IMG/VR virus record: IMGVR_UViG_3300029984_000001
Span: 62,001-126,000 of that record
Strand: one strand, 5' to 3'
DNA: 64,000 nucleotides
Position 1 is the first letter of the stretch. Each line of letters opens with the position of its first letter. This document shows positions 3,580 to 64,000 of the stretch, piece after piece. The notes below the pieces were generated by a model that was not told where the DNA came from, ran no database searches, and saw only the letters and a program-made list of their open reading frames with translations. A program made the position numbers and the translations under genes.

Positions 3580-3918
3580 ACCATAGCATATGGAAGTATA
3601 CTTTATAGTAAAGTAATAGATATTTCGTTCGATTACTCATTACAAATCCCATTAGGTATATTAGGCTTATTAGCGGCAGACTTCGATGGTGATGTATTGA
3701 ATGTTTTATTGATTATCAATGAAGAATTCAGAGTACAAGCAGAAAGAATATTAAGTGCAAGAAACGCAATGTTCATTTCAAAGAATGATGGTAAACTTGC
3801 ATCGAATATGATAGCAAATAAAGATACTACTATAAATATAAATAGTTTAATATCTATGTCTAGAACTAACTACACCCAAGATCAAATAGACCAAATAAAC
3901 AGATTAAAAGCAATGTAG
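3580..3918 (+). CDS. RNA polymerase beta' N-terminal subunit, exon 2
   Basis: Catalytic ADFDGD motif; spliced product 389+112 = 501 aa. Confidence 0.9.
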   Translation, partial: TIAYGSILYSKVIDISFDYSLQIPLGILGLLAADFDGDVLNVLLIINEEFRVQAERILSARNAMFISKNDGKLASNMIANKDTTININSLISMSRTNYTQDQIDQINRLKAM

Positions 3919-27600: not shown

Positions 27601-27819
27601 AAAATTACCCTAGATGTAATAGTGAATAAATGGATATATTTATATGGACAAGGGACACAATTTGCATTAGAATTATTTCCTGCATTTGCCAATATGATTA
27701 CAAACGCATATAATGGGCAATTCTTAAATAATCAACCAGCAATTGAAAAGCAATGTGGAACTCATATGGTAAACTTCTCTAAAGGTGTATTAAATATTAT
27801 AGAAAGTGCTATTAAATAA
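24685..27819 (+). CDS. large virion protein (internal-head-like, with protease-like dyad)
   Basis: Many hydrophobic-x-E|S/G/A candidate prohead-protease sites (IIKES, LFAES, IVTES, LLEES, YLEEG, ISLES, YLQES); VVLGHG and IFLMSC motifs. Confidence 0.6.
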   Translation: MGQFLQQIIKESKNVHGRDINLGVMPDYLKDDVITSMKNQGMSEKDIDLTVNSTDEDEKYSLQSKGVLSANDNVFPERFEKEKIELIKKSENIVEEYKNYINFEFDKIIKGNSNEDRIGPEGAIINIFSELTDNEKGNLPEEKVKRFLLESFFEISEDPKQIKKLLQLRINYNNKIITLLQKMLRTNYQILGISSEEAESLTKGLSHSDSKISGSNIKMIKELIIKNEKKFKPRPDMVDLRSLGFGVAFITNEDLRDVERYGKIDRLIHLLMRYDCVVLGHGSDHSSEWTDKVVQHQDHVKNLNKEYSNVDKQIKMMKKQLEKQYDNDTFKRLLSSGDSVLERIINYDHEDDHGKKFILNWYHIKESDIPKFKDAAKDILDYNKNIKELEDKRTERVKDMESIQDKEKEINSEEEKNRKWGIQNIKTEHGGPYTDINELCEQLIKEGFKKIFLMSCNPGHYKLSNDVLKHKGVIIHNAENTLFAESSVDNNENNEIVTESLDWDITSTELKLIDFCEANEIDYNNQQLLEESYFYLMENQEYLEEGIIGDLWQGLKTLVKKILQALIYLFKNAIAFVRALFNKIRQFFTGVSNPDAEFHNNKVSFISLESAQVKEVNVNNFNQLKVAVIKSCASISKEIDILSQKQTSMTKQTQSYIEKKGRDNMNEMVDMSLIIPYNEADTEIIKEDTQEIIDPNDRPDIVKEALKMITKRRIAYLQESDTTTVNQLTKSYSDTYLYSLVDKTYNEQLMKFIRTSHEIDKTEDSFKDIEYDVKRRQTSAAILNILKSDNIVLMISENNLPLPRTFKVITATDIRPGETKKKKVFIDVTTLITNDNGVYKCNPRSIDILLAYLVNGATQYIYYADPKRIIMDRNMISEGAWCFSKLFTYVIDYLVKVSVNGNMRDQIMYISSVYYLKTVLNKDLSDSHYKICKDISGLSDREIEILNIKFENENYTNIKTFIHGISDLCVNDKITLDVIVNKWIYLYGQGTQFALELFPAFANMITNAYNGQFLNNQPAIEKQCGTHMVNFSKGVLNIIESAIK

Positions 27820-30041
27820 TGAAAGATATTATAATAGATAGAATTAATGAACTTAAATTCTATACAGAAAGTAATATAAAGAATTTAGCAAACTCTAAAA
27901 TACCTTATAGAGTAGATCTAAATCCTATAGAAAAATATTCTTATAGATTAGACGGGAAGATTTATAACCCTGCCGTTGAATTCTCTAAAATATTAGTCTC
28001 ACAAGATTTACCATATACTAATATACCAAATTCCACATCAAATACTTATATCTTATCTTTTCAAGATGCTGTGTTACAAAAAGATATATATCCAATATTA
28101 TTATTCATAAATGGTAAGTTTATAAAATGGTCAGATATTACATTAGTAAAAGATGATTTTTATTCATATTTGATAATTAAGAATATGAAAGATGTAGGAG
28201 AAATTTATACACTAGATATAATAGTAATACCTGAAATAAATACTATTTATACAGAAAATGTAACTTCACCTAAATCTAATTGTATATTCTTTTTTGATTC
28301 TAATACAGATTTATTCGTATCATCACCATCATCTGGTAAGATGTATACAACAATTTCTTTAAATAATATTCCAGATATAGATATATATAAGAATACTGTT
28401 TACTCTGATAATAAATTTAATCTACCATTAGATTATAAGTATGAAATAGATAACTTGTTTGTATTTAACGATGGTTTAATATATGATTCTTCAAGTGTAA
28501 CTGCACATATATTAAATACATTTAATGTGTCCACCCCAAAGTCAATATTTGTTAGTATATTAGCATTTGCTTATAAAATTGGTAATACCCCAAAAGATAA
28601 TGAAAATACTATTATAAATAAAAATATTGCGACTAATAGATTATTAGCTAATCAGAATATAGATTTTTTTAATTCTATATCCGAAAGATTAGATTTTGAG
28701 ATGACCAATTCTAAAGATATAGAAACTAATATGAGTAATAGTCTAAGATATATAATGGATTACAATCCTCAGTTAATGAATCAGATATATAAAACTAAAT
28801 CTAATATATCTACACAATCATATACTGGTAAAGAATTAATAGGATGTATGCAAACAGATGGTTTTGTACATTTATCTAGAAGACGAAATAATATCATAGA
28901 TTGCTATTTTATAATATTTAAAAATGGATTTTTATATGAGCATTATAAATCTTCTATCTATAAAAATAATGAATACTTATTTAGATTAGATAACGTGAAA
29001 TATACTGATATCTTTGAAATATTATGTGTATCTAATGTTGATAATGGTATAACAGGAATTAAATTATGGTCTGGTGAAGATGATATTATTACATTAAGTC
29101 CGTCTATAAATATAGATGATATGATATTAGCATCACCCACACCTCATACACATTTATATAATCATGAAAGGAATGATAATATTATTTATAATGTAGAGTT
29201 TGAAGCTATTAGAGTATCTGAAGATAAAGTAGACTTAAAATTAAAAGATTCATATTATTATGATAAAACATTATACATTGGATCTAAGCACCAATTTAGA
29301 TATCATTGTATATATAACAATAAATCTACATCTATAACAGAAATAATATTACCTGATGAATTTAAAATGTGTAGTGAAAAAAGATGTTATATGATATTCA
29401 TAAATGGTAAGTATATAGATATATCTTCATATGATGTGACCATATATAATTCAGAAGATCCTTTCTATAATATAGGAGTATATCTAGATCAAGAGATATT
29501 ACCTAATGATAAAATAGAAGTTATATATGTCGGAAATATATTATCAAAAGTATATGAGAATATAGACGCAATAAATAACTCTGGTAACATATTATTAGAT
29601 TCTAGTAAATTGAAATATCCATTTGATAATGAATTATACATGATATTTATAGACGGAAGAAAGACAATTCTAACAGAAATAAATAATATTGACTCTAATA
29701 GATTCAATATAAAAACTACATCAGGACAAATTGTTAACAAAGTATCTATAATACAATTTATCGAGGAAGATGAAATTTTGTATTCATACTTTAAAGATAA
29801 TTCTAATTTATTATCTTCTATAATTAATAAATTAACAGAAGATGATATTAAATCGTTATATTCAACATCTAATATATCTACGAATTATGTATCTAACGAC
29901 ATTGATTTAAAATATAGAATGATGAGAATTGTAAAAGATTATTGGATGAAATCTTATATTAATACAGGAGACGAAATTCCTATCCATTTTAATGACTATT
30001 ATGAAGATGGAGAAATTATAGATACTGGTAATTTATCTTGA
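27819..30041 (+). CDS. virion structural (baseplate-like) protein
   Basis: Repeated (L/M)(L/I)FING(K/R) beta domains typical of jumbo phage structural proteins; coupled to 24685. Confidence 0.65.
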   Translation: MKDIIIDRINELKFYTESNIKNLANSKIPYRVDLNPIEKYSYRLDGKIYNPAVEFSKILVSQDLPYTNIPNSTSNTYILSFQDAVLQKDIYPILLFINGKFIKWSDITLVKDDFYSYLIIKNMKDVGEIYTLDIIVIPEINTIYTENVTSPKSNCIFFFDSNTDLFVSSPSSGKMYTTISLNNIPDIDIYKNTVYSDNKFNLPLDYKYEIDNLFVFNDGLIYDSSSVTAHILNTFNVSTPKSIFVSILAFAYKIGNTPKDNENTIINKNIATNRLLANQNIDFFNSISERLDFEMTNSKDIETNMSNSLRYIMDYNPQLMNQIYKTKSNISTQSYTGKELIGCMQTDGFVHLSRRRNNIIDCYFIIFKNGFLYEHYKSSIYKNNEYLFRLDNVKYTDIFEILCVSNVDNGITGIKLWSGEDDIITLSPSINIDDMILASPTPHTHLYNHERNDNIIYNVEFEAIRVSEDKVDLKLKDSYYYDKTLYIGSKHQFRYHCIYNNKSTSITEIILPDEFKMCSEKRCYMIFINGKYIDISSYDVTIYNSEDPFYNIGVYLDQEILPNDKIEVIYVGNILSKVYENIDAINNSGNILLDSSKLKYPFDNELYMIFIDGRKTILTEINNIDSNRFNIKTTSGQIVNKVSIIQFIEEDEILYSYFKDNSNLLSSIINKLTEDDIKSLYSTSNISTNYVSNDIDLKYRMMRIVKDYWMKSYINTGDEIPIHFNDYYEDGEIIDTGNLS

Positions 30042-30141: not shown

Positions 30142-31344
30142 TTGAAAGAGTTTATGAGAAGAGTTTCTTTAGAAGAAGAGATATATGATATGAATAGATA
30201 TAATATAAATACTAGACCTATTTTACGTGAAATACATACCGCTGATGTTCATTTTGGTGCATTAGATCCAAAAATACAATATGATATACTAGAAGAACAA
30301 TTTCTTAATAAATTAGAAGAAATAGAATTCGATGTATTATCTATAAATGGAGATTTATTCAATCGAAAAGGAATGACTAATTCGCCTATAACTTCATACG
30401 CTGCAATGTATGTGGCTAGATGTGTAAATATATGTAAAAAGAAAAGTAATAATCCTACAATGGTTATAATAGATGGTACAGATTCTCATGATGCAGGTCA
30501 ATTATCTTTATTTTATCATTATTTAAAAGATCCAGATATAGATATGAGAATAGTTACCAAAGTACAATTTGAATATATTAAAGGTGCTAAGATACTCTGT
30601 ATACCAGAGATGTATAATATGGGAGAAGATTATTATAATCATTTTTTAAAACATAGTGGATTATATGACGGAGTATTCATGCATGGTATGATTAAAGGAG
30701 CAGTTCATCAAGATGGAAGTGAAGGTATCAACTCATATAAAGCTCCGACATTCAGTATAAATGATTTTAATAACTGTTTAGGACCTATTATATGTGGACA
30801 TGTACATATTCCAGGATGTTTTAATAGGTATATTTATTATACAGGTTCCCCATTAAGATATGCTCATGGACAAGAAGAAGAAAAAGGTTTTATATTCTTA
30901 TTACATAATCTGAATGACCAATCTCATTATGTCCATTTTGAACCTATAAAGTCTTTTATATATGAGACTATTTTTTTAGATGATATTATTAATTCTGACC
31001 CTAAAGTTATATCTGACTTTATATGGCAATTAAAAAGTAAGGGTGTAGATAATTTAAGAATTAAATTCAATAAACCTTTGTCTGAAAATGGACTTAATAA
31101 TCTGGGAATTCTGAAAACATATTTTAGAAATATAAATTATATAAAATTTGATTATAATAATAAAGAAAAAATAGAAGAACAAAAAATGATTAATGAATTA
31201 AATGATAAATTCTCTGAATATGATTTTATATTTGATGATAATTTATCTGCTGAACAGCAATTTGTAATGTATGTAAATCATAAAGAAAAAAGTGAGTTTA
31301 TTACTGTAGATGAATTTAAACAGATCTTAAATGATGAATATTGA
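30142..31344 (+). CDS. SbcD/Mre11-like metallophosphoesterase nuclease
   Basis: HTADVHFG, NGDLFN, GTDSHD, MHG, CGHVH, YTGSP motifs; TTG start after GAGGTG. Confidence 0.88.
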   Translation: MKEFMRRVSLEEEIYDMNRYNINTRPILREIHTADVHFGALDPKIQYDILEEQFLNKLEEIEFDVLSINGDLFNRKGMTNSPITSYAAMYVARCVNICKKKSNNPTMVIIDGTDSHDAGQLSLFYHYLKDPDIDMRIVTKVQFEYIKGAKILCIPEMYNMGEDYYNHFLKHSGLYDGVFMHGMIKGAVHQDGSEGINSYKAPTFSINDFNNCLGPIICGHVHIPGCFNRYIYYTGSPLRYAHGQEEEKGFIFLLHNLNDQSHYVHFEPIKSFIYETIFLDDIINSDPKVISDFIWQLKSKGVDNLRIKFNKPLSENGLNNLGILKTYFRNINYIKFDYNNKEKIEEQKMINELNDKFSEYDFIFDDNLSAEQQFVMYVNHKEKSEFITVDEFKQILNDEY

Positions 31345-31453: not shown

Positions 31454-33235
31454 ATGAATGTTGCTAGACGACAAAAATTTATGAATAATGGAAGTAGAAC
31501 TGTATCTTTTTCTGATAAGAAAGTAGAAATAGTTTTTGATATAGGAATGCTTGATTTAATGTGTTCTTATGTTTTATCTGAAAATAGAACTATTAAAAAG
31601 AGTCAATTAATAAATATGAGAAATCTGTTTGAATGTATAGATTTAGAATTATATAGAACAGATATAGAAAAAAAGAAAAGAATAGATTTTATAAGAAAAG
31701 GATTAGAGGGAAGAATACTAAGAAATCTAAAAGAATATACATTAATATTGCAATATATTAATGGTGGTTTTCTAGATACAAATAATTTAGATGTAGATAT
31801 AACATCTGCTACTATTTTAAACTCTGACGAGATGCATTTTATAAATGAAACTGTATCCTCAGCATTAAAATATACCTTTATATATAACGATGTAGATAGA
31901 ATGTATAGTGTATTAACAAGATTTAAAGCTGCTGATTATGTATCAAAACAATATATGGTAAATGAACTTGAGGGAATTATTGCTGATATGCAAAATAAAT
32001 TCAGACGAGTTAGAGCTGACTCTACAAATGAATTGGAATTTAGATTAAAACCAGAAATATTAGAAGATTCTTTTAGAGATATTTATGATAAGTTAACAAA
32101 TCCATCTTCTAAATTAGTAACAGGATGGCAAGGTTTTAATGAAATGCTTGGTGGAGGTTTCTTTGGAACTAGACTTTACATGTTATTAGGGCTAACAGGA
32201 GGAGGAAAATCTTTAACACTATTGGATATATGTCTTCAATTAAAGAAATATAATAAGAATTTCAAATGTAAAGATCCATCTAAAAAACCTTGTATTGTGT
32301 ATCTTACAATGGAGAATACAGTTGAAGAGACTGTAGAAAGATTATTCGAAATGTCAACAGGAAGAGAAATTCAAGGATTATCATTTGAAGAGGCTTTACA
32401 TTTACTTGTAACAGATGGAGAGTTATATTTATCAGACGAATCTCCAATAGATATAATAATAAGATATAAAGCTAATAAATCTGTTGATACTGGATATTTA
32501 TATGAGATGACTGAAGATTTAGAAGATGAAGGAATGGAAGTAATTGCAGTAGTTCAAGATCATATTGGAAGAATGAGATCTACTCAAAATCTTACAGAAA
32601 CTAGATTAGAATTAGGAACTGTAGCAAATGAAATGAAAACATTCTCTCAATTAAAAGAAATTCCATTTATCACAAATTTCCATCTGAATAGAGAAGCAGC
32701 CGCAAAAATAGATGAGGCTACTAATTGTAATAAATCAGATTTAATTAGAGTATTAGGTAGAGCTAATGTTGCAGAATCTCAAGTTATGATTAATAATATA
32801 GATGGTTGTTATATGATAAATCAAGAATGGGATCAAAATGGTAATAAATGGTTAGGTGTAATGAGAACAAAGAAAAGGTTTAAAGCGAGTGATAGAGCTG
32901 TTATATTCATGCCATATACATCTCCTAATTCCCCTAAACTATTAGAAGATTATTATGCTACAATACCAGTATTTAGAGATTCACTTAGAGAAAATGTTAT
33001 TGGATACAACCAACCACAAAAGAAATCTAATAATAAAATACAACCAAATCCTTATAATGGAAATATAAGATCTATTGACGAGGTAATAGGTTCACAAAAT
33101 AAATTTGTAGATACAAGAACAGAAATAAACATATTCGATATAGAAAAATTAGCAGATTCATCTTGTGGACATAGAGCTGATTTGGTTAAAGATATAATAC
33201 CATTGAAAAAATTTATGACAAGAGTACCTGCATAG
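31454..33235 (+). CDS. DnaB-like replicative helicase
   Basis: TGWQGFNEMLGGGF, Walker A GLTGGGKS, YLTMEN, VQDHI, HLNR; AACA-N6-TA at 31414-31425. Confidence 0.88.
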   Translation: MNVARRQKFMNNGSRTVSFSDKKVEIVFDIGMLDLMCSYVLSENRTIKKSQLINMRNLFECIDLELYRTDIEKKKRIDFIRKGLEGRILRNLKEYTLILQYINGGFLDTNNLDVDITSATILNSDEMHFINETVSSALKYTFIYNDVDRMYSVLTRFKAADYVSKQYMVNELEGIIADMQNKFRRVRADSTNELEFRLKPEILEDSFRDIYDKLTNPSSKLVTGWQGFNEMLGGGFFGTRLYMLLGLTGGGKSLTLLDICLQLKKYNKNFKCKDPSKKPCIVYLTMENTVEETVERLFEMSTGREIQGLSFEEALHLLVTDGELYLSDESPIDIIIRYKANKSVDTGYLYEMTEDLEDEGMEVIAVVQDHIGRMRSTQNLTETRLELGTVANEMKTFSQLKEIPFITNFHLNREAAAKIDEATNCNKSDLIRVLGRANVAESQVMINNIDGCYMINQEWDQNGNKWLGVMRTKKRFKASDRAVIFMPYTSPNSPKLLEDYYATIPVFRDSLRENVIGYNQPQKKSNNKIQPNPYNGNIRSIDEVIGSQNKFVDTRTEINIFDIEKLADSSCGHRADLVKDIIPLKKFMTRVPA

Positions 33236-33244
33236 AGGTACTCT
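33221..33244. terminator. terminator overlapping helicase stop
   Basis: AGAGTACCT-gcatag-AGGTACTCT then T-tract. Confidence 0.6.
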
Positions 33245-33247
33245 TTT

Positions 33248-33661
33248 TTATGATATTTTGTTTCTTAATTTAGTTAGAATAGTTTGATTATTTTTATATA
33301 TATCTGATAACATTTCTGCTAAAACATCAGCATGCATCATTCTTATTTTTTTCTTATTGAAATCTTTCATATCACATATATTATTTAAAAATAGAATAAT
33401 ATAATCTAGTTCAGTAGAACCATATATATCATGAGCTAATATAGCAGGTGATTGTTCATATTTTATATATTGTTCTTCATCTAGTATTACCATTTTAGAT
33501 AAAGAGAATATTTCTTTTTTATAGTCACATAATACATTATGTGTTATAAGATAAGTATCTCCTATTAATTGATATATTGATAATAAGTCGTAAGTAATTT
33601 CAGAAGTAGGTTTAGAATTTATAAATTCATTGAGAGTGTATGTTATATCTGGGTTACTCAT
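33248..33661 (-). CDS. baseplate wedge-like protein (T4 gp53/LysM-like)
   Basis: PAILAHDIYGSTELDYIILFLN motif. Confidence 0.65.
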   Translation of the reverse strand: MSNPDITYTLNEFINSKPTSEITYDLLSIYQLIGDTYLITHNVLCDYKKEIFSLSKMVILDEEQYIKYEQSPAILAHDIYGSTELDYIILFLNNICDMKDFNKKKIRMMHADVLAEMLSDIYKNNQTILTKLRNKIS

Positions 33662-36682: not shown

Positions 36683-37054
36683 ATGAACAATTTTATGAAG
36701 AGAGACGAAATAATTAATGAGGATTTATTAAAAGAGGGGTTAATCAACCCAGATGCTTTACTCAACAAAAAAGAGAAATCTTATATGATACTATACTTTG
36801 CGACAGAACCAGTATCAAAAGAAGAAGAAAAAAGCTGGCATGTTGCTGTAGGAAGAGAAGAAGCATATAATTTTATCAAAGGAATGATAAGTTGTATAGA
36901 TTTAGAATCAACGAAAGTAGTTGTAGGAGGAACGACATATGAAGATGCTAAAAATGCCTATCAATTCATGAAATACATATCACAGTTCATGAATGATCCA
37001 ACGTTTAATATCGACGAATACTATACTCCAGATGAAGATGAGAAAGGAGAATAA
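36683..37054 (+). CDS. hypothetical acidic protein
   Basis: Start at MNNFMKR after GAAAGG; TATATTATA at 36632. Confidence 0.7.
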   Translation: MNNFMKRDEIINEDLLKEGLINPDALLNKKEKSYMILYFATEPVSKEEEKSWHVAVGREEAYNFIKGMISCIDLESTKVVVGGTTYEDAKNAYQFMKYISQFMNDPTFNIDEYYTPDEDEKGE

Positions 37055-40649: not shown

Positions 40650-41802
40650 AAAATGTGTGTCCCTTCTCTATAGTAATATAGAGTCGAATAACCTATTAAA
40701 TGCTGGAAAGTCCACAAAAGTTCATAAACCATTATTATAATAAGAAATGGTTACGAAAGTAGAAACAATATATGAACCTGACATATGCTGAAATAAAAGC
40801 TTTAGTTGAGATTCTAAAGTGCTAAGTGTTATTGACAAGGGATTCTCAGCAGTAAAATAATTTGCTTAAATAAAATAATTAATAAAAAGGAGGTGAAAAA
40901 TATGAATGTTTTTATGCAACGATGTTTTGATTATTTTCCTATAAATATATCAAATCCTACTATAGAAATAGTTAGATATCCAGAGATGTGGAAACCTTTG
41001 AATATAATTGGAATAAAATATAATACATATAATATTAGCACAAAAGGTAGAATCTATTCAATACCAAAACAGAGATTATTAAATCCTCAATGTAATTCTG
41101 ATGGATATATGAAAATAAAATTATTAACAAATATTGAATCAAGAGAAGAGTTCAGTTTACATAGATTAGTTTTAATGACATTCTTTCCAATTTTCTATAT
41201 GAATGAATTAGAAGTGAATCATATAAATGGTAAAAAAGATGATAATGATATTGCAAACTTAGAATGGTGTAGTAGATCTCAAAATATACATCATAGTTAT
41301 TTACTTGGGTCTAGAAGTCAAATTGGTGTAAATAATGGTAATGCTAAATTTAATGAAAATGATGTAAGAAGAATATGTGAATATAGACAACAAGGATTAG
41401 TTGCAAGTCAAATATGTAAAGCTATGGATTTGGATTGTGAACCTAATAAGAGACATAGACGAGTAGAAAATATATTATTCGGAGTTACATGGAAACATAT
41501 ATCATCGCAATATGGAATATAAGTTTAAGCAACTTATTTTATTCAACGACTATCGAAAGCTATATACTAAGACAATATTCTTAGTTGAAAATAAGGTATA
41601 TATTAACAATATATACACGAAGCAAGTAGAGTAGAGCCAAGTGGTAGAACCGTTCCGTAATAAGGATATAAGAGTTCTTTAAATCGAAGTGATAGGTTGC
41701 CTATATATGATATAGGTAAATGATATAGTCTTAACACCTACTTAACAGTAGGGAAGTTCATAAGAGAACTGTATTATCTAACGAATAGTATGAAAACAAT
41801 TG
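40650..41802 (+). mobile_element. group I intron in gyrB
   Basis: Exon ends ggaU pairing IGS gtcc; P/Q/R/S elements near-identical to intron 1; terminal G 41802; splicing restores IIIMSD|ADKDGDHI. Confidence 0.9.
40902..41522 (+). CDS. intron-encoded HNH homing endonuclease
   Basis: HRLVL, VNHINGKKDDN...NLEWCSRSQN; in the P6 loop. Confidence 0.88.
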   Translation: MNVFMQRCFDYFPINISNPTIEIVRYPEMWKPLNIIGIKYNTYNISTKGRIYSIPKQRLLNPQCNSDGYMKIKLLTNIESREEFSLHRLVLMTFFPIFYMNELEVNHINGKKDDNDIANLEWCSRSQNIHHSYLLGSRSQIGVNNGNAKFNENDVRRICEYRQQGLVASQICKAMDLDCEPNKRHRRVENILFGVTWKHISSQYGI

Positions 41803-55375: not shown

Positions 55376-57544
55376 TTGAACAATGTATTAGAGATTAATA
55401 GAAATATTGTAGAAATTATAGAGAAAGAAAAAACTAGAATACCTAATATGGAAAGATTATTAGGATATTCTGCAAATATGCCATCGAACTCTGCTAACAG
55501 TGGATCTCGTCGCTTATTAATGGTTTCACAAGCATCACAAAGACTTGAGGTTTATAATTCTCAAAGACCTCTTTTATCTACTGGATCAGAAAATCAGATA
55601 GGACATTATTCTTCAGAATTTGTTAAGACTGAAGATGAATTGAAAGTAATCGCTAGAGTAGAAAAATATAGATTTGTACCTGGACATAATTATTTTCTAT
55701 TAGTACAGAATACTAGAACAGGGGAATTTGATTTTATACAAAGGATAGGACATAGTCATAATACAGAATCTTACGGATTCTTGTATAACAATACATATAT
55801 AGATAAAGTAAAACCAGGATACACAATACCAAAAGGAGTTCCAATTAAAAAATCTACTTCATATGATGATAATAATAATAGGGAGGATGGAGTTAATCTC
55901 GACGTTACTTATATAACTAATGAAGAAACAAAAGAGGATTCTATTGAAATATCAGATTATGGTGCTGAATTATTATCTGCCCCTTTAATAGAAAATTTCT
56001 CTACTTTCTTAAGTGAAAATGAAATACCTGTAAATACATATGGGAATGATACAGTATATAAAGCTATTCCAGATATAGGAGAAAAAATAGCTAATGGTAT
56101 AGTTATGGTTACTAGAGTTGAAAAGAAGAATGAAATAATGTTTGCACAGTCAACCGAAAATTTGAAAAAGATATTTATAGGAGATACTAGATTTTCTTTA
56201 AAAGGTGAAGTAGTAGATATAAATATATATTGTAATAATCCTGAATTTTTAAATACTAATCCTAATTATGCTCAGTTTAAATATTACTATGATCAACAAA
56301 TGGATTTTGCAAAAGAAATGGTAGACGCGATTGAAACATATACAGATGTAAAGAGACATTCTTATCAATTAGAAAAATTACATTATAGATTAAAACAACA
56401 ACTAGAAGAAGTTCCGTTCTCTAAAGATAAAAGTTTTAGTAATATTCTAATTGAAATTACTGCTGTAGAAATGAATCCTTTAAGAGTTGGTGATAAGATC
56501 ACAAATAGATATGGTGGTAAAGGAGTTATATCTGAAATAAGACCAAGACATATGATGCCATATACTATTGTCAATGGAGAGAAAATTTATGCAGATATAA
56601 TTTATAATTCTAATACATGTGTTAATAGAGTTAACCCTGGACAACTATTTGAGATGTCTATAAACTTCATTGGTCAAAATATAACTTCTAGAATAAATGC
56701 AGGCGATAATATAAATTCTCTAATGGAAATGTACTATAATTTTATAAGAATAGTCGCACCAGACATGTATAAATTTGTTAGAGAGAAATTTAAAGTAGAT
56801 GAATTAGGTTCAATGGTACAAATATTAGAATCTATTAAAAGAGATGGTGGAATTAATGTATCACAAAAACCTATAACAGAAGTAATGACAGTAGATAAAT
56901 TGAAAGAATTGTATGATGTATTACCTTGGATAGAACAGTATAAAGTAATTGTCCCTCAAGTAAACAGTAATGGGGATATTAGATACATTTACGCTAGAAG
57001 AAGAATGGTAATATCAAAACAATACATGTATAGATTAAAACAGTATGCAGAAGAGAAATTCTCTGTTACTTCTTTATCTACCACTAATATCAGAAATGAA
57101 AATAGTAAGAACTCTTTGAAGAAGAACCATAAATCTCCTTACTCAAAAACCCCTACTCGCTTCACCTCGGAGATGGAGGTTCATGACATGATTCATTTAG
57201 GTGCAGAGAATGTTATTACAATATTAATGATACATTCAGCATCTCCAGCTGCACGGCGTCTTTGTGAACAGTTGTTAACAGGAGATCCGTTTAAAGTTGA
57301 TATAAGATTAGATGAAAATTGTAGAAACCGTTCAGTGGAGATAGTTAATACATATTTAAGAACCATAGGATTGAAATTGAACTTTAAGAAAATTCCTAGG
57401 GTTAAAACACAATTTATGACTAGAAGTATAGATTTTATGGAAAGATGTAAAGAGGATGAAAAGTTAACATTTATGCATCGTGATTCATTTGATACCAAAA
57501 GAAAATTTTGTCATAGAGGTAGAAGTAAATTAAAAAGAGATTAA
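55376..57544 (+). CDS. non-virion RNA polymerase beta C-terminal subunit
   Basis: NSGSRRLLMVSQASQ, GVNL, EDSI, GDKITNRYGGKGVIS, RVNPGQLFE, YMYRLKQ, EMEV. Confidence 0.92.
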   Translation: MNNVLEINRNIVEIIEKEKTRIPNMERLLGYSANMPSNSANSGSRRLLMVSQASQRLEVYNSQRPLLSTGSENQIGHYSSEFVKTEDELKVIARVEKYRFVPGHNYFLLVQNTRTGEFDFIQRIGHSHNTESYGFLYNNTYIDKVKPGYTIPKGVPIKKSTSYDDNNNREDGVNLDVTYITNEETKEDSIEISDYGAELLSAPLIENFSTFLSENEIPVNTYGNDTVYKAIPDIGEKIANGIVMVTRVEKKNEIMFAQSTENLKKIFIGDTRFSLKGEVVDINIYCNNPEFLNTNPNYAQFKYYYDQQMDFAKEMVDAIETYTDVKRHSYQLEKLHYRLKQQLEEVPFSKDKSFSNILIEITAVEMNPLRVGDKITNRYGGKGVISEIRPRHMMPYTIVNGEKIYADIIYNSNTCVNRVNPGQLFEMSINFIGQNITSRINAGDNINSLMEMYYNFIRIVAPDMYKFVREKFKVDELGSMVQILESIKRDGGINVSQKPITEVMTVDKLKELYDVLPWIEQYKVIVPQVNSNGDIRYIYARRRMVISKQYMYRLKQYAEEKFSVTSLSTTNIRNENSKNSLKKNHKSPYSKTPTRFTSEMEVHDMIHLGAENVITILMIHSASPAARRLCEQLLTGDPFKVDIRLDENCRNRSVEIVNTYLRTIGLKLNFKKIPRVKTQFMTRSIDFMERCKEDEKLTFMHRDSFDTKRKFCHRGRSKLKRD

Positions 57545-57593
57545 ATATTAGATAGGATTAATCTCCTATCTAATACAAAAAAGAGGTGATAAA

Positions 57594-58448
57594 ATGGAAA
57601 TGAAAAAATTCATGACTAGAGATGAAAAGATTAATCCAGATTTATTATTGAGATATCCACGTATAGGTGAGACTAGTATAAATAAAAGAGGAAGTACATT
57701 AGAAATAGTAGATTATAGAAAATGGGATCAAGTAGATGTAATGGTAATAACTAGATTAGAATCTGGTGAATTCAAATATTATAGATCAAATAATTGTGAA
57801 TATAGTTGTTTCATCAAAGGTTCAATAGGATCACCTTTTGACAAATCTACTTGTGGTGTTGGATATATGGGAATTGGGTCTTATTCATCTATCACACACC
57901 CAAAACTTCATATGTTTTGGAGTGGTATGTTATTTAGAGGATATAATGATAAGTATTATGGAAATAATACTTATATGGATGTAACAGTAGATTTTAGATT
58001 TCATAATTTTCAATATTTTGCAGAGTGGGCTGAACAGAACTATTATGAAATCAATGGAGAAAGAATGACCTTGGATAAAGATGTATTATTTAAAGGTAAT
58101 AAAATATACAGTCCAGAAACTTGTTGTTTTCTCCCTAATAACCTAAATGTAATGTTTACAAAAAGACAAATCGATAGAGGAGAATTACCAATAGGTGTAA
58201 CACGTAAGGATGATTGTACACAAAATCCTTATAGAGTTTCTATGTCTGTGGATGGGAAGGGTGCTGTTCATATTGGGACATTTCCAACTCCAGAAAAAGC
58301 ATTCATTGCTTATAAAGAAGCAAAGGAAGAAGAGATAGAAAAACAAGCAAATATATACTTGAATGAGAAAGGCGGACAATTTATTCCACAGTTTAGAGAC
58401 ATTGTTTATCCAGCTTTATTACGTTATAAAGTCGAGATTACAGATTAA
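57594..58448 (+). CDS. free-standing homing endonuclease-like protein (HNH-variant + AP2-like)
   Basis: Paralog of 3975; LDKDVL.K.NKIYSPETCCFLP..LN, HIGTFPTPEKAF..YK.AKE. Confidence 0.75.
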   Translation: MEMKKFMTRDEKINPDLLLRYPRIGETSINKRGSTLEIVDYRKWDQVDVMVITRLESGEFKYYRSNNCEYSCFIKGSIGSPFDKSTCGVGYMGIGSYSSITHPKLHMFWSGMLFRGYNDKYYGNNTYMDVTVDFRFHNFQYFAEWAEQNYYEINGERMTLDKDVLFKGNKIYSPETCCFLPNNLNVMFTKRQIDRGELPIGVTRKDDCTQNPYRVSMSVDGKGAVHIGTFPTPEKAFIAYKEAKEEEIEKQANIYLNEKGGQFIPQFRDIVYPALLRYKVEITD

Positions 58449-58466
58449 AAGGAAAGAAGGTTTAAT

Positions 58467-58856
58467 ATGGATAATATAAATACTAAATTTACTACTTGTG
58501 TTTTTATGAAAGTGTTTACTCCTACTGAAGAATTAGTAAAAGTAGAAAGAGCTATTTCTAAATCAATTATAAGAGAAGAAGGTACTGATTATTTTCATGT
58601 AACAACTAAAAATACTATAATAATAAAACATTTAACTTCTATGTATAATGGGATTAAAAGTGGTGATCCTTTTCGGGTAAAGACTTATTTAGGTTTAATA
58701 GAATCTAACCAACTACTAGCTAATTTTGCAAATGAAAATTGTTACGTTGAAATAAATGAAATTAAACATATATTACAAATTAAATCAATAGAAAAATTAG
58801 AGGAGGGTCATGTAAAAGTAACATTCATTCTTGCTGGTTTTAAAATTAAATTTTAA
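58467..58856 (+). CDS. hypothetical protein
   Basis: ORF track. Confidence 0.65.
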   Translation: MDNINTKFTTCVFMKVFTPTEELVKVERAISKSIIREEGTDYFHVTTKNTIIIKHLTSMYNGIKSGDPFRVKTYLGLIESNQLLANFANENCYVEINEIKHILQIKSIEKLEEGHVKVTFILAGFKIKF

Positions 58857-58896: not shown

Positions 58897-61197
58897 ATGG
58901 ACGAGAATTTAAAATTAATCTTTGATAATTTAATGAAAGGGATTCTTCCTACTGATGATGATAAATTGTTTGTTAATACCTATATAAAAAATATATTAGA
59001 TACAGTGAATTTATCGGAGAGACAAATAGAAGATTCTAAAATAGTATTACAAATTTGTAATACTATTTTTAGTTGTACAGATTTAAAGTTTGTTAATAGT
59101 CAGGTATGGGATTTATTGATGGAGAGGTATAAAATATACCATCCAGATAATTTTCAAGTAGGAAGTTTTGATATTGATTTTAAATCAACAATTAAACAAC
59201 AAAATCAGGAGTCAAAAGAAAATATGAAAGTCTTTATGGTGCGTCTTGACAAGACTCAGGAAGATAAAATGTTGTTCAAAGAAGAATTAGCAAGTTCTTC
59301 GTATAAAGCACCTGAAGAGACCTATTACAAAACATTTATGAAACGTGAAGGTGCTTATATTAATAAAAGGAATACGAATACTCCTCATAATTATCAAAAA
59401 CTTGTTGGTACTTTAGATAAAGTAAAGTTTGTATTAAATCAACAAGCAATAGAAAAAGGTGTATTTACTGATTCTAATGTAAAAGTATTAGAAAGGGATT
59501 TCTTTGGTGTTCATATACAACAAGGAATATTAAATCCTAAAAGAATAATAAGAATATTGTTAGAGTTGAAAATTGATGGTGTATCTGCTGAATGTGATGT
59601 AGGAACATGTGTTGATAGTGGACGTTCAAGAGGAGATATGGAATCGGATAAAGCTACAGATCTAACACCAATATTAAAAGGATATAGATTTCCAAATGCT
59701 CCTATATCTTTATATAAAGAACCAAGATTTGGAATGAAGTTTGAAGCTATAATTACTAAACCTGACTTAAATACTTTCAATTATATTAAGAATTATTCTT
59801 ATAAGAATTGTAGAACAGGCATAATAGGATTATTCTCTGGTTCAGATGCATATCAACATCAAAACCTGATTACTCTAGTACCTTTAGCAACATCATTAGA
59901 AGGTGTATTTAAAGATAGAGTAGAAGAGATTGAATTTTTAAATATGTGTTATGCTACTAAAGTTCCTTTAAAGTATGCTGTTATAGAAGGAGACTTAACA
60001 ACTATTCTATTCCAAGTAAAAAGATTCGTTGAAGAAGCAGAAGCTATGAGACCTTATATGGGATACATGTATGATGGAGTGGTATTATCTTATTTGGATC
60101 AAGATATAATAGATAAACTACCTAGATCTAATTACATAAATAAACATACTATAGCTATTAAATTTAATCCAGAGAAAGCTCAAACTACAATTAGAGCTTT
60201 AACTATAACTGTTGGACAAGATGGAGTTATAACTCCTATGATTCATTATGATATAATTAGCTTTATGGGAACTACTCATACCAAATCATCTATACACTCT
60301 TATGAAAGATATAAACAATTAGGTTTCAGATACGGTAATATTGGAGATGCAGAGTATGTAAATGATGTAATGCCATATGTTACTAAACCTGATAATCATT
60401 TTAATGCTGAGATAGATAAAGCTAATGAACCTATACCTTTTCCTACACATTGTCCAGAATGTCAAACTAAACTTATAGAATCTAAATCTGGAAAGAATAT
60501 GATATGTGATAATATCGGATGTAAAGGTAGAGCTTTAAGTAGAGTAGTAAATATGATGAAAAAATTAAATTTAAAAGATTTTGCTGAAGCTGCTTTTGAA
60601 AAAATCAAGATATATTCTTTAACTGAATTATTGAATCTCAGATATGAAGATGTATTAAAGTTTGGTCTAGGAGAAGTGAACTCTCAAAAGTTTATGGATC
60701 GAATGAATTCTATTAAAACAGAACCTATATATGATTATGAAATTCTAGGGTCTTTAGGTATTGATAATATGGGAAGAGGTAAATGGAAATTGATCTTGAA
60801 TAAATATACATTACAAGAAGTAATGTCTATGCCAGAAACTTTTAGATATTCTGCTATCGCTGAGATAAAAGGATTAGGTCCCGAAACAGCTCGTACTCTT
60901 AATGATAGAATGGAATTCTTTATGGAGGATTTGATTACTGTAGGATGTTTAAAGAATATAGTAATATCAAAAGGGGTTACTTTACCTAAAGTAAGAATGA
61001 CTGGATTTAGGGATGCTGAACTTATTGAGAAAGCTAAGAAACTTGGTTTTGATATAGGTGAAGGTTCAGTCACTAAAGATACAAATGTATTATTAGTACC
61101 AACACTAAGTCATGAAAGTCCTAAAGTTACAAAAGCAAAAAATGATGGTATACTTATTATGAGTAAACAAGATTTTATAAACCAATATAATTTATAA
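58897..61197 (+). CDS. ligA: NAD-dependent DNA ligase
   Basis: ELKIDG, SRGD, DGVV, AIKF, VGQDGVITP, CPEC..C....C Zn finger, HhH, BRCT (RMTGFRD...SVTKDT). Confidence 0.9.
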   Translation: MDENLKLIFDNLMKGILPTDDDKLFVNTYIKNILDTVNLSERQIEDSKIVLQICNTIFSCTDLKFVNSQVWDLLMERYKIYHPDNFQVGSFDIDFKSTIKQQNQESKENMKVFMVRLDKTQEDKMLFKEELASSSYKAPEETYYKTFMKREGAYINKRNTNTPHNYQKLVGTLDKVKFVLNQQAIEKGVFTDSNVKVLERDFFGVHIQQGILNPKRIIRILLELKIDGVSAECDVGTCVDSGRSRGDMESDKATDLTPILKGYRFPNAPISLYKEPRFGMKFEAIITKPDLNTFNYIKNYSYKNCRTGIIGLFSGSDAYQHQNLITLVPLATSLEGVFKDRVEEIEFLNMCYATKVPLKYAVIEGDLTTILFQVKRFVEEAEAMRPYMGYMYDGVVLSYLDQDIIDKLPRSNYINKHTIAIKFNPEKAQTTIRALTITVGQDGVITPMIHYDIISFMGTTHTKSSIHSYERYKQLGFRYGNIGDAEYVNDVMPYVTKPDNHFNAEIDKANEPIPFPTHCPECQTKLIESKSGKNMICDNIGCKGRALSRVVNMMKKLNLKDFAEAAFEKIKIYSLTELLNLRYEDVLKFGLGEVNSQKFMDRMNSIKTEPIYDYEILGSLGIDNMGRGKWKLILNKYTLQEVMSMPETFRYSAIAEIKGLGPETARTLNDRMEFFMEDLITVGCLKNIVISKGVTLPKVRMTGFRDAELIEKAKKLGFDIGEGSVTKDTNVLLVPTLSHESPKVTKAKNDGILIMSKQDFINQYNL

Positions 61198-62711: not shown

Positions 62712-64000
62712 TTGGATCAATCACTATTAATGAGTGAATATAGTAAGACAAGAGAACAATTCAATCCAAAATTATTTGAGAGAAAAAATGAAACTGTATT
62801 TAATCATATATTAAAAGTTTTGAAGTCTGTAGAGAGGGAAGGACAATTTACCTTTAAATTACATTCATATAGGTTAGTTACAAATTATGCAGAGATACAA
62901 TCTATATTATGTGACTATGAGAATCTGCATAAGAAAGGAAAGAATAAGAGAAAACTAAACATTTATGAATATATAAATTTAAAAGAAACCGATATGCATA
63001 TATTAATATCAAATTTCTATATGAAAATAAGAGATGAAGAAAAAATCTTAACAATTTATATAGGCATTCCTATCTATATAAACAAATATTATTTTAGAAT
63101 AAGTGGTAATTTATATTTACCTAATTTACAAATAGTAGACGGATCTACATTCAACTCATCAACATCTAAAAATGCAATTTCAGATAGTGTAATATTAAAA
63201 ACTATCTTAATGTCTCTTAAGACTTATAGAAATTCTTATCCTATAAAAACAACAGACGATATTGATATATACATTACTAATTTCTCTATGACTTCTTTCA
63301 GTAAAACTTTTCCTGTATTCAAATATATCTTAGCAAAATTTGGGTTATATAGAACTATGAGTTTTATGAACTTTGATTTTGTCAAAATATCTAAATCAGA
63401 TCCAAAGTATAATGATTATTACACATTCAAAAGTAATAAGATTTATATATCTGTACCTAAAGTATTATTTGATAATGATACAGTACTACAAGCATTTATA
63501 TATACATTATATGTAGTGTTTAAGAACAAACTTACTAAATATGATAATATATTTACTAGAACATTCTGGTTAGAATCATTAGGTGGTGAGTTTGGTAGTT
63601 ATACTAAAAATAAAGGTTTGAATTTATTAGAATCAATAGAAGGTGTATATGATTTAGATACTAAAGAGGCTTTACATTTACCAGAAGAATATAAACAGTC
63701 CGTATATCATATATTAAGATGGATTATAACTGAATTTAGTAATCTAATGGAAAGGGATAATCTTGATTTAGGGTGTAAGAGAATTAGATTAGAAGAATAT
63801 ATGGCATCTCTATATGCAATGAAATTTGCAAGTATAATTCATAGATTTGCAGATCTTGGACATAATCTTGATTTTGAAATAGCAGAAAAATATTTGAGAG
63901 GATTAAAACCTACATACTTACTAGACACAATGATTCAATGTAAATTTATTAATTGTAAGAATACAGTTAACGATATAGATACTTTCCAAGCTATTAAATA
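62712..64000 (+). CDS. non-virion RNA polymerase beta N-terminal subunit (runs off window)
   Basis: Not in ORF track; TTG after AGGGGGG; IGIPIYINKYYFRISGNLYLPNLQIVD (cf. RpoB GDIP...FIINGTERVIVSQL) and DNLDLGCKRIRL (cf. DIDHLGNRRVR). Confidence 0.85.
   Translation, partial: MDQSLLMSEYSKTREQFNPKLFERKNETVFNHILKVLKSVEREGQFTFKLHSYRLVTNYAEIQSILCDYENLHKKGKNKRKLNIYEYINLKETDMHILISNFYMKIRDEEKILTIYIGIPIYINKYYFRISGNLYLPNLQIVDGSTFNSSTSKNAISDSVILKTILMSLKTYRNSYPIKTTDDIDIYITNFSMTSFSKTFPVFKYILAKFGLYRTMSFMNFDFVKISKSDPKYNDYYTFKSNKIYISVPKVLFDNDTVLQAFIYTLYVVFKNKLTKYDNIFTRTFWLESLGGEFGSYTKNKGLNLLESIEGVYDLDTKEALHLPEEYKQSVYHILRWIITEFSNLMERDNLDLGCKRIRLEEYMASLYAMKFASIIHRFADLGHNLDFEIAEKYLRGLKPTYLLDTMIQCKFINCKNTVNDIDTFQAIK

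What the first reader, a model, noticed from the sequence alone, without database searches (positions are those of the whole stretch)
57401..57544. RNAP beta C-terminal tail is a tandem array of FMxR motifs
After the conserved end of beta (YLRTIGLKLNF) the protein continues KTQFMTRSIDFMERCKEDEKLTFMHRDSFDTKRKFCHRG: three exact copies and one degenerate copy in about 35 aa. Multivalent display suggests avid binding to an oligomeric partner. This is reminiscent of T4 gp55/gp33 coupling late transcription to the replication clamp (inference).
Basis: partly seen in the sequence, partly recalled or inferred. Interest (0 to 1): 0.65.

Follow-up and report, generated by a model that had tools for sequence, protein, structure and literature searches.

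The report
Shared address tag on phage DNA enzymes
The repeated FMxR motif in the tail of this jumbo-phage RNA polymerase subunit is real, and it is one copy of a short peptide tag that the phage also puts on the ends of its replication, repair and homing-endonuclease proteins; related phages carry a different tag at the same places, which points to an undescribed docking or addressing system.

Summary
ORF 55376..57544 is the beta C-terminal half of the non-virion RNA polymerase (ortholog of AR9 gp089). Its last 52 residues carry FMTR, FMER, FMHR and a degenerate FCHR.

The array is one instance of a proteome-wide motif:
- FM.R is the most over-represented 3-of-4 residue pattern in the 263.6-kb phage genome: 41 observed against about 3 expected, and 24-26 against 0.3-0.4 within the terminal 14-20 residues.
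- It sits at residues 4-7 of N-termini, in the last 5-15 residues of C-termini, or in loops.
- Every annotated carrier is DNA/RNA machinery: four of the five nvRNAP subunits, both DNA polymerase subunits, DnaB, an SF2 helicase, NAD ligase, SbcD and HNH homing endonucleases.
- Orthologs of virion RNAP subunits and virion proteins, and UvsX, primase and SbcC, lack it.

Five related IMG/VR phages each have a different motif at the same orthologous positions (for example PF.H, [VI]I[SKR]F, KIW). Cultured AR9 and PALS_2 have none.

Best reading: a lineage-co-evolving docking or address tag for one shared, unidentified phage partner. The tandem copies on RNAP give avidity. The T4 clamp analogy fits the logic, but no clamp or clamp-loader gene was detected.

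The parts
55376..57544 (+). Gene for the non-virion RNA polymerase beta subunit, C-terminal half (722 aa; TTG start)
   Evidence: ORF list. Pfam RNA_pol_Rpb2_6. PHROG 3295 E 5.6e-85 over aa 25-670. AR9 g089 'non-virion RNAP subunit', 31% identity over aa 27-669. Same gene order as AR9: UvsX upstream, NAD ligase downstream.
57386..57541 (+). 52-residue C-terminal tail (aa 671-722) beyond the conserved end of beta; basic, predicted disordered
   Evidence: Alignment A1: conservation stops at F670, K672 and K675. AF2 pLDDT below 50 and no secondary structure for 671-722. No significant match to any cultured phage.
57413..57424 (+). Tag copy 1, FMTR (aa 680-683)
57434..57445 (+). Tag copy 2, FMER (aa 687-690)
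57470..57481 (+). Tag copy 3, FMHR followed by D (aa 699-702); Arg coded by CGT, not AGA
57506..57517 (+). Degenerate copy, FCHR (aa 711-714), 12 residues after copy 3. The same 12-residue period is seen in the DNA polymerase array.
57546..57575 (.). Perfect 12-bp inverted repeat directly after the stop codon (hairpin between beta-C and the HNH gene)
57594..58448 (+). Free-standing HNH homing endonuclease gene with the tag at its N-terminus (FMTR at 57609..57620). It is an insertion not found at this place in relatives.
   Evidence: PHROG 953 E 2.8e-52
58897..61197 (+). NAD-dependent DNA ligase with tags at 59233..59244 and 59335..59346 (aa 113 and 147, a loop pair that carries each lineage's own motif in relatives) and at 60691..60702
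   Evidence: Pfam ligase domains, all four below Pfam's cut-offs, the identification resting on the AR9 g095 ortholog; AR9 g095 ortholog
30142..31344 (+). Mre11/SbcD-like nuclease with the tag at aa 4-7 (30151..30162)
   Evidence: AR9 g002 ortholog. N-terminal alignment across lineages.
31454..33235 (+). DnaB-like replicative helicase with the tag 7 residues from the C-terminus (33212..33223)
   Evidence: PHROG 19 and 3213; AR9 g007
2518..3303 (+). HNH homing endonuclease with the tag at aa 4-7 (2527..2538), lying inside the split nvRNAP beta'-N gene (1085..2275 plus 3472..3918)
36683..37054 (+). 123-aa protein of unknown function with the tag at aa 4-7 (36692..36703). Orthologs in G003 and G004 carry their own tags.
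40902..41522 (+). HNH homing endonuclease with the tag at aa 4-7 (40911..40922)
62712..64000 (+). nvRNAP beta N-terminal half (runs off the window). Its tag, FMMR at aa 521 of 579, lies just beyond the window.
   Evidence: PHROG 2943; AR9 g105 ortholog

Best explanation
The FMxR copies in the beta tail are instances of a short linear peptide tag; the extended form is K-x-F-M-x-R-[D/E/V]. This phage places the tag in flexible N-termini, C-termini or loops of the proteins that must work on its DNA. The carriers are four of the five non-virion RNA polymerase subunits, both DNA polymerase subunits, the DnaB and SF2 helicases, NAD ligase, the SbcD nuclease, several small unknown proteins and its resident homing endonucleases.

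The most likely mechanism is that each tag docks, probably as a short extended strand, into one pocket of a single partner. That partner is probably phage-encoded, and it marks the place where phage DNA is replicated and transcribed. The place could be a factory scaffold, the gate of a compartment or a DNA-bound hub. Tagged proteins would thereby be gathered there.

Multisubunit or bulky enzymes carry several copies: four on beta-C, four on the polymerase exonuclease subunit, and seven summed over the RNAP. These copies would raise avidity. Because tag and pocket only have to fit each other, they drift together. Every related lineage therefore uses a different tag at the same positions, and selfish homing endonucleases have acquired the local tag.

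Shown: the motif, its statistics, its placement, the carrier set and the co-variation across lineages. Inferred: binding, the single shared partner, that the partner is phage-encoded, and localisation as the purpose.
For: 1. Unbiased pattern scan. FM.R is the top-ranked pattern in the genome: 41 observed against 3.3 expected by composition and 3.0 in shuffles (maximum 9). In termini it is 24 against 0.27 (terminal 14 residues) or 26 against 0.43 (terminal 20).

2. The signal is at protein level, not DNA level.
- Of 60 genomic matches to the 12-nt pattern, 41 are in frame in sense ORFs, 2 more are in frame in short uncalled ORFs, 6 are in other frames and 9 are antisense.
- Arg is coded by both AGA and CGN, and the x codon varies.
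- There is no DNA tandem repeat.

3. Position. Sixteen copies lie in the first 12 residues, 11 of them exactly at aa 4-7, after well-spaced Shine-Dalgarno sites; 8 lie in the last 14 residues.

4. Carriers. All annotated carriers are DNA/RNA enzymes and map to AR9 g089, g105, g154, g226, g002, g007, g095, g132, g152, g156 and g271. Orthologs of two virion RNAP subunits, of virion proteins, and UvsX, primase and SbcC are untagged.

5. Co-variation.
- Five whole related genomes each have their own terminally enriched motif, equal to the repeat in their beta-C tail.
- A cross-matrix shows each motif enriched only in its own proteome.
- Orthologs carry the local motif at the same terminus or loop.
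- Being tagged in G000 predicts being tagged in each relative (Fisher p 6e-4 to 2e-11).
- In at least 18 further lineages the tail motif recurs in the ligase loop.

6. Purifying selection on the motif alone. A 75%-identical DNA polymerase keeps FMxR at three positions while the linkers differ.

7. The tags sit on add-ons. Tagged proteins exceed their AR9 orthologs by a median of 59 aa, against 9 aa for untagged ones (p 0.015). AR9 and PALS_2 show no comparable motif.

8. The tail is predicted unstructured.
Against: - No receptor was identified. Clade-specific proteins gave no informative Pfam or PHROG match, and one candidate looked tail-fibre-like.
- No chimallin-like shell, clamp or clamp loader was detected. 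The place or hub that the tag would address is therefore hypothetical.
- Binding and localisation are untested, and the phages are uncultivated.
- About half of the carriers have unknown function, so the statement that the tag occurs only on DNA machinery rests on the annotated half.
- My gene calls are home-made, so some N-termini may be mis-set.
- The motifs of relatives were defined partly by eye before counting. The FM.R and PF.H results, however, came from unbiased scans.
Confidence: 0.55

Rival explanations
1. Clamp-type coupler. The tags are processivity-hub binding peptides, like the C-terminal clamp-binding tails of T4 gp43, gp33 and gp55 or the bacterial and PIP-box motifs. They would tether RNAP and replisome enzymes to a ring or clamp-derived protein on DNA and so couple late transcription to replication.
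For: - The same tag is on the polymerase subunits, ligase, helicases and RNAP, at termini, which is typical of clamp clients.
- AR9-type nvRNAP reads promoters in the template strand (PMC9209446, abstract seen), so coupling to replication is plausible; that step is inference.
- Chimalliviruses have a clamp-derived hub, Rhc, that binds DNAP-C and co-purifies with nvRNAP (PMC13648698).
Against: - No beta-clamp, gp45-type or PCNA domain and no clamp-loader family was found in a genome rated 100% complete.
- The RNase H gene has no clamp domain.
- The motif matches no known clamp-binding consensus, and it changes completely between lineages at 40-55% protein identity.
- Homing endonucleases, SbcD and four separate RNAP core subunits are tagged, which tethering of a holoenzyme does not require.
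Confidence: 0.17
2. Homotypic stickers. The tags bind each other or a tag-rich scaffold weakly and drive a condensate of DNA enzymes. Multi-copy carriers would be scaffolds and single-copy carriers clients, with no dedicated receptor pocket.
For: - There are multivalent arrays with a regular 12-residue spacing on beta-C and on the polymerase.
- The tags pair aromatic or hydrophobic residues with Arg, Lys or His, in disordered and charged linkers.
Against: - The four-residue core is strictly conserved, including Met at position 2 and fixed spacing, in 41 copies.
- Each lineage has a sharply defined alternative core.
Both points suggest a structured pocket rather than generic stickers.
Confidence: 0.1
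3. Turnover or folding signal. The tags are degrons or chaperone-recognition peptides read by a protease, an unfoldase or the phage GroEL homolog. They would time or assist the supply of DNA enzymes.
For: - Terminal placement is typical of degrons.
- The genome encodes a GroEL homolog (AR9 g228 ortholog) and three AAA ATPase paralogs.
Against: - The AAA paralogs are not conserved in the clade.
- AR9 has the GroEL but no tags.
- Host proteases and chaperonins have conserved specificities, which fits poorly with a different code in each lineage.
- Tandem arrays and internal loop copies in ligase and polymerase are not degron-like.
Confidence: 0.08
4. No function. The array would be chance, shared ancestry of paralogs, read-through into an intron or homing-endonuclease remnant, or a nucleic-acid signal near gene ends that happens to be translated.
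For: - An HNH gene starting with the same motif lies 50 bp downstream, and a 14-nt near-repeat links the first tail copy to it.
- Several carriers are HNH paralogs.
Against: - Statistics.
- Frame and strand specificity and synonymous Arg codons.
- Most carriers are unrelated proteins.
- No Rfam intron or other RNA family in the window.
- All 33 distinct related beta-C proteins have tails of 62-104 residues without any downstream HNH gene, and orthologous co-variation is seen.
Confidence: 0.02

Closest known systems
T4 clamp-binding C-terminal peptides (gp43 polymerase, gp33 and gp55 late-transcription factors binding the gp45 clamp)
   Same: A short peptide at protein ends is shared by replication and transcription proteins of one phage, giving them a common docking partner. 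It is an add-on to otherwise conserved enzymes.
   Different: - Here the tag is on core RNAP subunits themselves.
- It occurs at N-termini, C-termini and loops, and in tandem arrays.
- It also marks helicases, a nuclease and homing endonucleases.
- Its sequence is unrelated and differs in each lineage.
- No clamp or clamp loader gene is detectable.
Selective protein import into the chimallivirus phage nucleus (PicA/Imp1)
   Same: - The set of proteins concerned is almost the same: polymerases, helicases, ligase, nvRNAP.
- The determinants differ between related phages.
- Homing endonucleases matter in competition between such phages.
   Different: - Reviews state that chimallivirus cargo is recognised through surface patches of folded proteins, not a terminal signal (PMC12908238).
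- AR9-like phages lack chimallin (PMC13282480).
- None of the clade-specific proteins tested here matched any PHROG or Pfam family of that system.
Terminal targeting peptides of prokaryotic protein compartments (encapsulin cargo-loading peptides, microcompartment encapsulation peptides) and eukaryotic NLS/PTS signals
   Same: Short, transferable, terminal or loop peptides recognised by one receptor and present on functionally related but unrelated proteins. This comparison rests on general knowledge.
   Different: No shell or receptor gene is identified here. The cargo is DNA/RNA machinery of a virus. The code turns over between close lineages.
AR9 nvRNAP beta C-terminal subunit gp089 (solved as part of the AR9 nvRNAP)
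   Same: It is the ortholog of the catalytic body: 31% identity, the same split of beta, the same gene neighbourhood.
   Different: AR9 gp089 ends about 19 residues after the conserved end with an acidic stretch and no repeats. The AR9 proteome shows no terminal tag.
Chimallivirus Rhc (RNase H fused to a clamp-derived domain)
   Same: It is a single phage protein that touches both the split DNA polymerase and the nvRNAP (PMC13648698). This shows that hubs shared between replication and transcription exist in msRNAP-encoding jumbo phages.
   Different: The RNase H of this phage is 238 aa and has no clamp-sized extra domain. No peptide motif has been described for Rhc partners.

Membership tests
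Non-virion multisubunit RNAP, beta C-terminal half (AR9 gp089 / PHROG 3295) | Homology to the Rpb2 domain 6 / beta catalytic region over the full subunit | tested here: met
   Pfam PF00562 E 6.6e-13. PHROG 3295 E 5.6e-85 over aa 25-670. tblastn to AR9 g089 at 31% over aa 27-669.
Non-virion multisubunit RNAP, beta C-terminal half (AR9 gp089 / PHROG 3295) | Non-virion rather than virion paralog | tested here: met
   The best AR9 match is g089, annotated as a non-virion subunit. The virion beta-C (g264) matches a different G000 protein. Absence from the virion itself is not testable.
Short linear motif (SLiM) shared by unrelated proteins | Short core, significantly over-represented, in non-homologous proteins | tested here: met
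   41 copies against 3 expected in 32 proteins, most of them unrelated by BLAST.
Short linear motif (SLiM) shared by unrelated proteins | Located in disordered or terminal regions | tested here: met
   24 of 41 copies lie within the terminal residues. The tail has pLDDT below 50. This is a monomer model, so the evidence is moderate.
Short linear motif (SLiM) shared by unrelated proteins | Motif conserved while flanks diverge; present at orthologous sites | tested here: met
   L065 polymerase at 75% identity. Orthologous positions in five lineages.
Short linear motif (SLiM) shared by unrelated proteins | Binds a defined domain of a partner | not testable with these tools
   No partner was identified. 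No complex prediction was run because no candidate pair could be justified.
Sliding-clamp binding motifs (T4 type, bacterial QL[SD]LF, PIP box) | Match to a known clamp-binding consensus | tested here: not met
   The core F-M-x-R, with its basic flank and acidic follower, fits none of the consensus sequences. The consensus sequences are from general knowledge.
Sliding-clamp binding motifs (T4 type, bacterial QL[SD]LF, PIP box) | A clamp and clamp loader available in the system | tested here: not met
   PF00712, PF02916, PF00705 and PF13177 have no match at E up to 1 (PF00712 at up to 0.001) in the complete genome, while control genomes do match. A very divergent clamp or the host clamp cannot be excluded.
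Chimallivirus nuclear import cargo | Phage encodes chimallin and PicA | tested here: inconclusive
   Ten large clade-specific proteins have no PHROG or Pfam match, and reviews say AR9-like phages lack chimallin. Chimallin and PicA profiles were not searched directly.
Chimallivirus nuclear import cargo | Recognition through folded surface patches, not a linear terminal signal | tested here: not met
   Here the shared feature is a linear terminal or loop peptide. The property of the family is taken from PMC12908238.
DNA-level tandem repeat or mobile-element read-through | Nucleotide repeat units, or continuation of the ORF into an intron or endonuclease remnant | tested here: not met
   TRF finds none. 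Rfam finds none. Tails are present in all relatives, which lack the downstream HNH gene.

The most novel reading that the evidence does not exclude
The tags are the entry password of a nucleus-like or otherwise closed replication compartment built without chimallin by this AR9-related clade of uncultivated jumbo phages. Every polypeptide that must reach the phage DNA carries it. The password and its gatekeeper diversify quickly, so that nucleases and homing endonucleases of hosts and rival phages are kept out, and resident homing endonucleases survive only by copying the local password. This would be the first linear import signal for a viral compartment in bacteria.
Probability: 0.2. Interest if true: 0.95.

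Novelty: new variant of a known kind. Interest (0 to 1): 0.8.

Why it matters
If the reading is right, one can list from sequence alone the proteins that a jumbo phage sends to its DNA. That list includes a dozen proteins of unknown function and the phage's own selfish endonucleases. It also shows that the code is rewritten in each lineage while the carrier set stays the same.

How large phages organise replication and transcription in space, and how they exclude foreign nucleases, would then become directly testable. A four-residue peptide is available as bait for finding the receptor, and tags can be swapped between lineages. The work would also give a portable tag for sending proteins to phage DNA. 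For RNA polymerase biology, it shows a core subunit that has acquired a multivalent recruitment tail. Six literature searches found no description of such a tag.

Tried and rejected
- Intron or RNA element under the tail: Rfam at gathering thresholds found nothing in the window.
- DNA tandem repeat: none found.
- Close homologs among cultured phages:
  - No DNA match for the region.
  - The tail as a protein gives only E=5 noise.
  - AR9, PALS_2 and AgentSmith orthologs have no repeat-bearing tail.
  - PALS_2 has an unrelated paralog-family C-terminus.
- Receptor hunt, none of which gave a candidate:
  - Pfam and PHROG scans of about 30 clade-specific proteins were uninformative. They only reclassified some as a Cas4-like nuclease, a GyrB piece, a lysin, a gp25-like baseplate protein and a PC4-like ssDNA-binding protein.
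  - An ESM Atlas look at the 740-aa protein at 27819..30038 suggested a tail-fibre-like protein at low confidence.
  - A scan of 71 six-way orthogroups for columns that are acidic where the tag ends in Arg or Lys and hydrophobic where it ends in Phe gave 12 scattered columns and no cluster.
  - A transmembrane and pI survey was uninformative.
- Clamp and hub searches:
  - Clamp and clamp-loader searches were negative.
  - The RNase H has no clamp domain.
  - The three AAA paralogs are not conserved in the clade.
- Single-protein searches of IMG/VR with DnaB and the DNA polymerase reached only near-identical contigs plus one 75% relative. Whole genomes of relatives were fetched instead.
- No complex prediction was run, since no pair could be named with reason. 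No reads tools were used.
Full report
**What is at the coordinates**

The window is bases 62001-126000 of a single 263,571-bp, 25.8% G+C IMG/VR virus record rated 100% complete. ORF 55376..57544 (+, 722 aa) is the C-terminal half of a split RNA polymerase beta subunit. The evidence:
- Pfam Rpb2 domain 6 and PHROG 3295, E 5.6e-85 over residues 25-670.
- The best cultured relatives are the Bacillus phages AR9 and PBS1, at 31% identity over residues 27-669.
- In AR9 the matching gene is g089, annotated as a non-virion RNAP subunit. It lies downstream of a UvsX-like recombinase gene, as here.

In an alignment of 30 orthologs the last conserved positions are F670, K672 and K675. The remaining 52 residues (57386..57541) hold FMTR, FMER, FMHR and FCHR at residues 680, 687, 699 and 711.

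**Chance, DNA repeats and read-through are excluded**

- FM.R is expected about three times in the whole proteome, yet three copies fall within 50 residues.
- Tandem Repeats Finder sees nothing.
- The copies use different codons, including CGT as well as AGA for Arg.
- Rfam finds no intron or other RNA family in the window.
- AlphaFold2, run with the 30-sequence alignment, gives pLDDT below 50 and no secondary structure for residues 671-722. This is weak evidence, because residues 558-656 are also poorly modelled in the absence of beta-prime.

**The array is one case of a genome-wide tag**

- In a home-made gene set of 307 ORFs, FM.R occurs 41 times in 32 proteins.
- An unbiased scan of all 3-of-4 residue patterns ranks it first. 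It is seen 41 times against 3.3 expected, and within the terminal 14 residues 24 times against 0.27.
- Within-protein shuffles give means of 3.0 overall and 0.43 in the terminal 20 residues (where 26 are observed), with maxima of 9 and 3.
- Sixteen copies lie in the first 12 residues, 11 of them exactly at residues 4-7, behind well-spaced Shine-Dalgarno sites and ATG or TTG starts. Eight lie within the last 14 residues.
- The extended form is K at -2, then F-M-x-R, then D, E or V, then often K.
- The signal is at protein level. Of 60 genomic matches to the corresponding 12-nt pattern, 41 are in frame in sense ORFs, 2 more are in frame in short uncalled ORFs, 6 are in other frames and 9 are antisense. 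Seven in-frame copies use CGN for Arg.

**Who carries the tag**

Every carrier that can be annotated acts on DNA or RNA. Orthology to annotated AR9 genes identifies them:
- nvRNAP: beta-C (this gene, g089), beta-N (g105), beta-prime-C (g154) and the fifth, promoter-specificity subunit (g226).
- DNA polymerase: the exonuclease-bearing subunit (g132), with copies at residues 78, 611, 623 and 635, and the catalytic subunit (g152).
- Helicases: DnaB (g007) and an SF2 helicase (g156).
- NAD ligase (g095) and an Mre11/SbcD nuclease (g002).
- A conserved protein of unknown function (g242).
- HNH homing endonucleases: five of six members of one family and two of five of another, counting a fragmented copy.

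About fifteen further carriers have no known function. Orthologs of two virion RNAP subunits (g264, g145) and of virion proteins are untagged. So are UvsX, primase, SbcC and nvRNAP beta-prime-N. Tagged proteins are longer than their AR9 orthologs by a median of 59 residues, against 9 for untagged ones (p 0.015). The tags therefore sit on add-ons.

**Relatives use other tags at the same places**

- A scan of IMG/VR found 46 loci (33 distinct proteins) with beta-C at 34-48% identity. All continue past the conserved end; the tails measured were 62-104 residues. Nearly all carry 2-4 copies of a short motif that differs from lineage to lineage; a few tails showed no clear repeat.
- I fetched five whole genomes, G001-G005. 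In G003 the top-ranked pattern of the unbiased scan is PF.H (28 against 1.8 expected; 13 against 0.13 in the terminal 14 residues). This is exactly the repeat of its beta-C tail.
- The other four genomes have terminally enriched motifs that match their tails: [VI]I[SKR]F, [ML]V[TSK]F, [VIM]MC[KH] and KIW or [IV]W[KH]K.
- A cross-matrix shows each motif enriched only in its own proteome. For example, FM.R counts 41 in G000 and 0-3 elsewhere, and PF.H counts 28 in G003 and 0-2 elsewhere.
- Orthologs carry the local motif at the same terminus or the same loop. Examples are the N-termini of SbcD and of the g226-like subunit, the C-termini of DnaB, beta-prime-C, the SF2 helicase and the g242-like protein, and the loop pair near residues 115 and 147 of the ligase. 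Further examples are the region near residues 600-635 of the polymerase exonuclease subunit and residues 370-390 of the catalytic subunit.
- Being tagged in G000 predicts being tagged in each relative (Fisher p from 6e-4 to 2.4e-11).
- In at least 18 further lineages the tail motif recurs in the ligase encoded just downstream.
- A polymerase that is 75% identical keeps FMxR at three positions while the linkers differ. Its contig comes from the same sample as G001, which uses a different tag.
- AR9 and Staphylococcus phage PALS_2 show no comparable motif. AR9 and AgentSmith beta-C have no such tail, and PALS_2 has an acidic tail without repeats.

**Interpretation**

A four-residue core is kept under selection, shown in flexible ends and loops of unrelated enzymes with one shared field of action, and replaced wholesale in each lineage while the carrier set stays the same. 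This is what a docking peptide for one co-evolving partner looks like. The tandem copies on beta-C would add avidity, as would those on the polymerase, which share the 12-residue spacing. The assembled nvRNAP would display seven copies.

I take the partner to be phage-encoded, because bacterial hubs have conserved pockets and the code changes between phages of similar base composition. I take the purpose to be gathering the DNA-transaction machinery where phage DNA is replicated and transcribed. Both points are inference.

Two observations fit an address for individual polypeptides better than a tether for a finished holoenzyme. Homing endonucleases have acquired the local tag, and four RNAP subunits are tagged separately. 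This too is inference.

**The clamp idea and other rivals**

However:
- The genome has no detectable beta-clamp, gp45-type clamp, PCNA or clamp-loader family, while control genomes do match.
- Its RNase H has no clamp-derived domain, unlike the chimallivirus hub Rhc.
- The motif fits no known clamp-binding consensus.

A divergent clamp or the host clamp cannot be excluded. Homotypic stickers, degron or chaperone signals, and non-functional explanations are treated as rivals with lower weight.

For the nucleus-like import idea, reviews state that chimallivirus cargo is recognised through folded surfaces and not through a terminal signal, and that AR9-like phages lack chimallin. A linear import signal here would therefore be new. 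No shell or gate protein was found.

**Limits**

- The receptor is unknown, and all attempts to find it failed.
- Gene calls are my own.
- The motifs of four relatives were refined by eye.
- Half of the carriers are unannotated.
- The phages are uncultivated.
- No complex prediction was run, because I could not name a pair with reason.
- Six literature searches found no description of such a tag. The library is incomplete, so this does not prove novelty.

**Verdict**

- The tail is the most conspicuous instance of a lineage-variable address tag on the DNA and RNA enzymes of a clade of AR9-related jumbo phages.
- I rate it as a new variant of a known kind (hub-binding or targeting peptides).
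- There is a real chance (about 0.2) that it marks a new kind of viral compartment import.

Noticed in passing
window 1085..2275, 2518..3303, 3472..3918: The nvRNAP beta-prime N-terminal gene is split. Both outer ORFs match one continuous protein in relatives, and the insert carries a tagged HNH endonuclease gene. AR9 g270/g271 has the same arrangement, so this is probably a group I intron or similar, although Rfam reported none.
   Followed up: partly
genome 185535..188395 (- strand; L010:5535-8395), outside the window: The PolB catalytic subunit is split in two ORFs (338 and 374 aa) by a 54-aa remnant of a tagged HNH gene. The split falls exactly at the loop that carries the tags in the unsplit orthologs of relatives.
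   Followed up: partly
window 57546..57575: A perfect 12-bp inverted repeat with a 6-nt loop lies directly after the beta-C stop codon. No T-run follows, so it does not look like a classical terminator.
   Followed up: no
window 57594..58856: The HNH gene and the 129-aa ORF 58467..58856 form an insertion between beta-C and the ligase. In G001-G005 the ligase follows beta-C directly. A 14-nt near-repeat links the first tail tag (57411..57424) to the tag of the HNH gene (57607..57620).
   Followed up: partly
genome 34721..38252 (L165-L167), outside the window: Three tandem paralogs of classical AAA ATPases (PF00004, E 1e-23 to 1e-26). They are not conserved in the related phages, and their function is unknown.
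   Followed up: no
genome 242668..243075 (L013:2668-3075), outside the window: A PC4-like ssDNA-binding protein has a C-terminal acidic tip with a [YF][YF]DP core that is conserved in all six lineages. This resembles the partner-binding tails of SSB proteins and is a second, non-variable, terminal motif in the same phages.
   Followed up: no
window 33212..33250: The coding sequence for the DnaB C-terminal tag overlaps a stem-loop followed by a T-run, read by eye from the sequence context printed. It looks like a terminator that shares bases with the tag codons.
   Followed up: no
L065 (IMGVR_UViG_3300030294_000015) and G001 (IMGVR_UViG_3300030294_000005): Two related phages from the same sample use different tags: FMxR in one and [VI]I[SKR]F in the other. 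This is what one would expect if the codes are kept orthogonal between competitors.
   Followed up: partly
Staphylococcus phage PALS_2 (W02) and G002 genome 105861..116888: PALS_2 has about a dozen small paralogs ending in [IV][KR]E[NST]FK. G002 has five consecutive proteins ending in PF.CI. These are family-specific C-termini unrelated to the tag described here.
   Followed up: no
genome 143043..156054, outside the window: A nine-member paralog family, five members of which are rich in YC.G, C.GG and CI.G patterns, accounts for the other over-represented patterns in the genome scan. They are probably fibre-like structural proteins.
   Followed up: no
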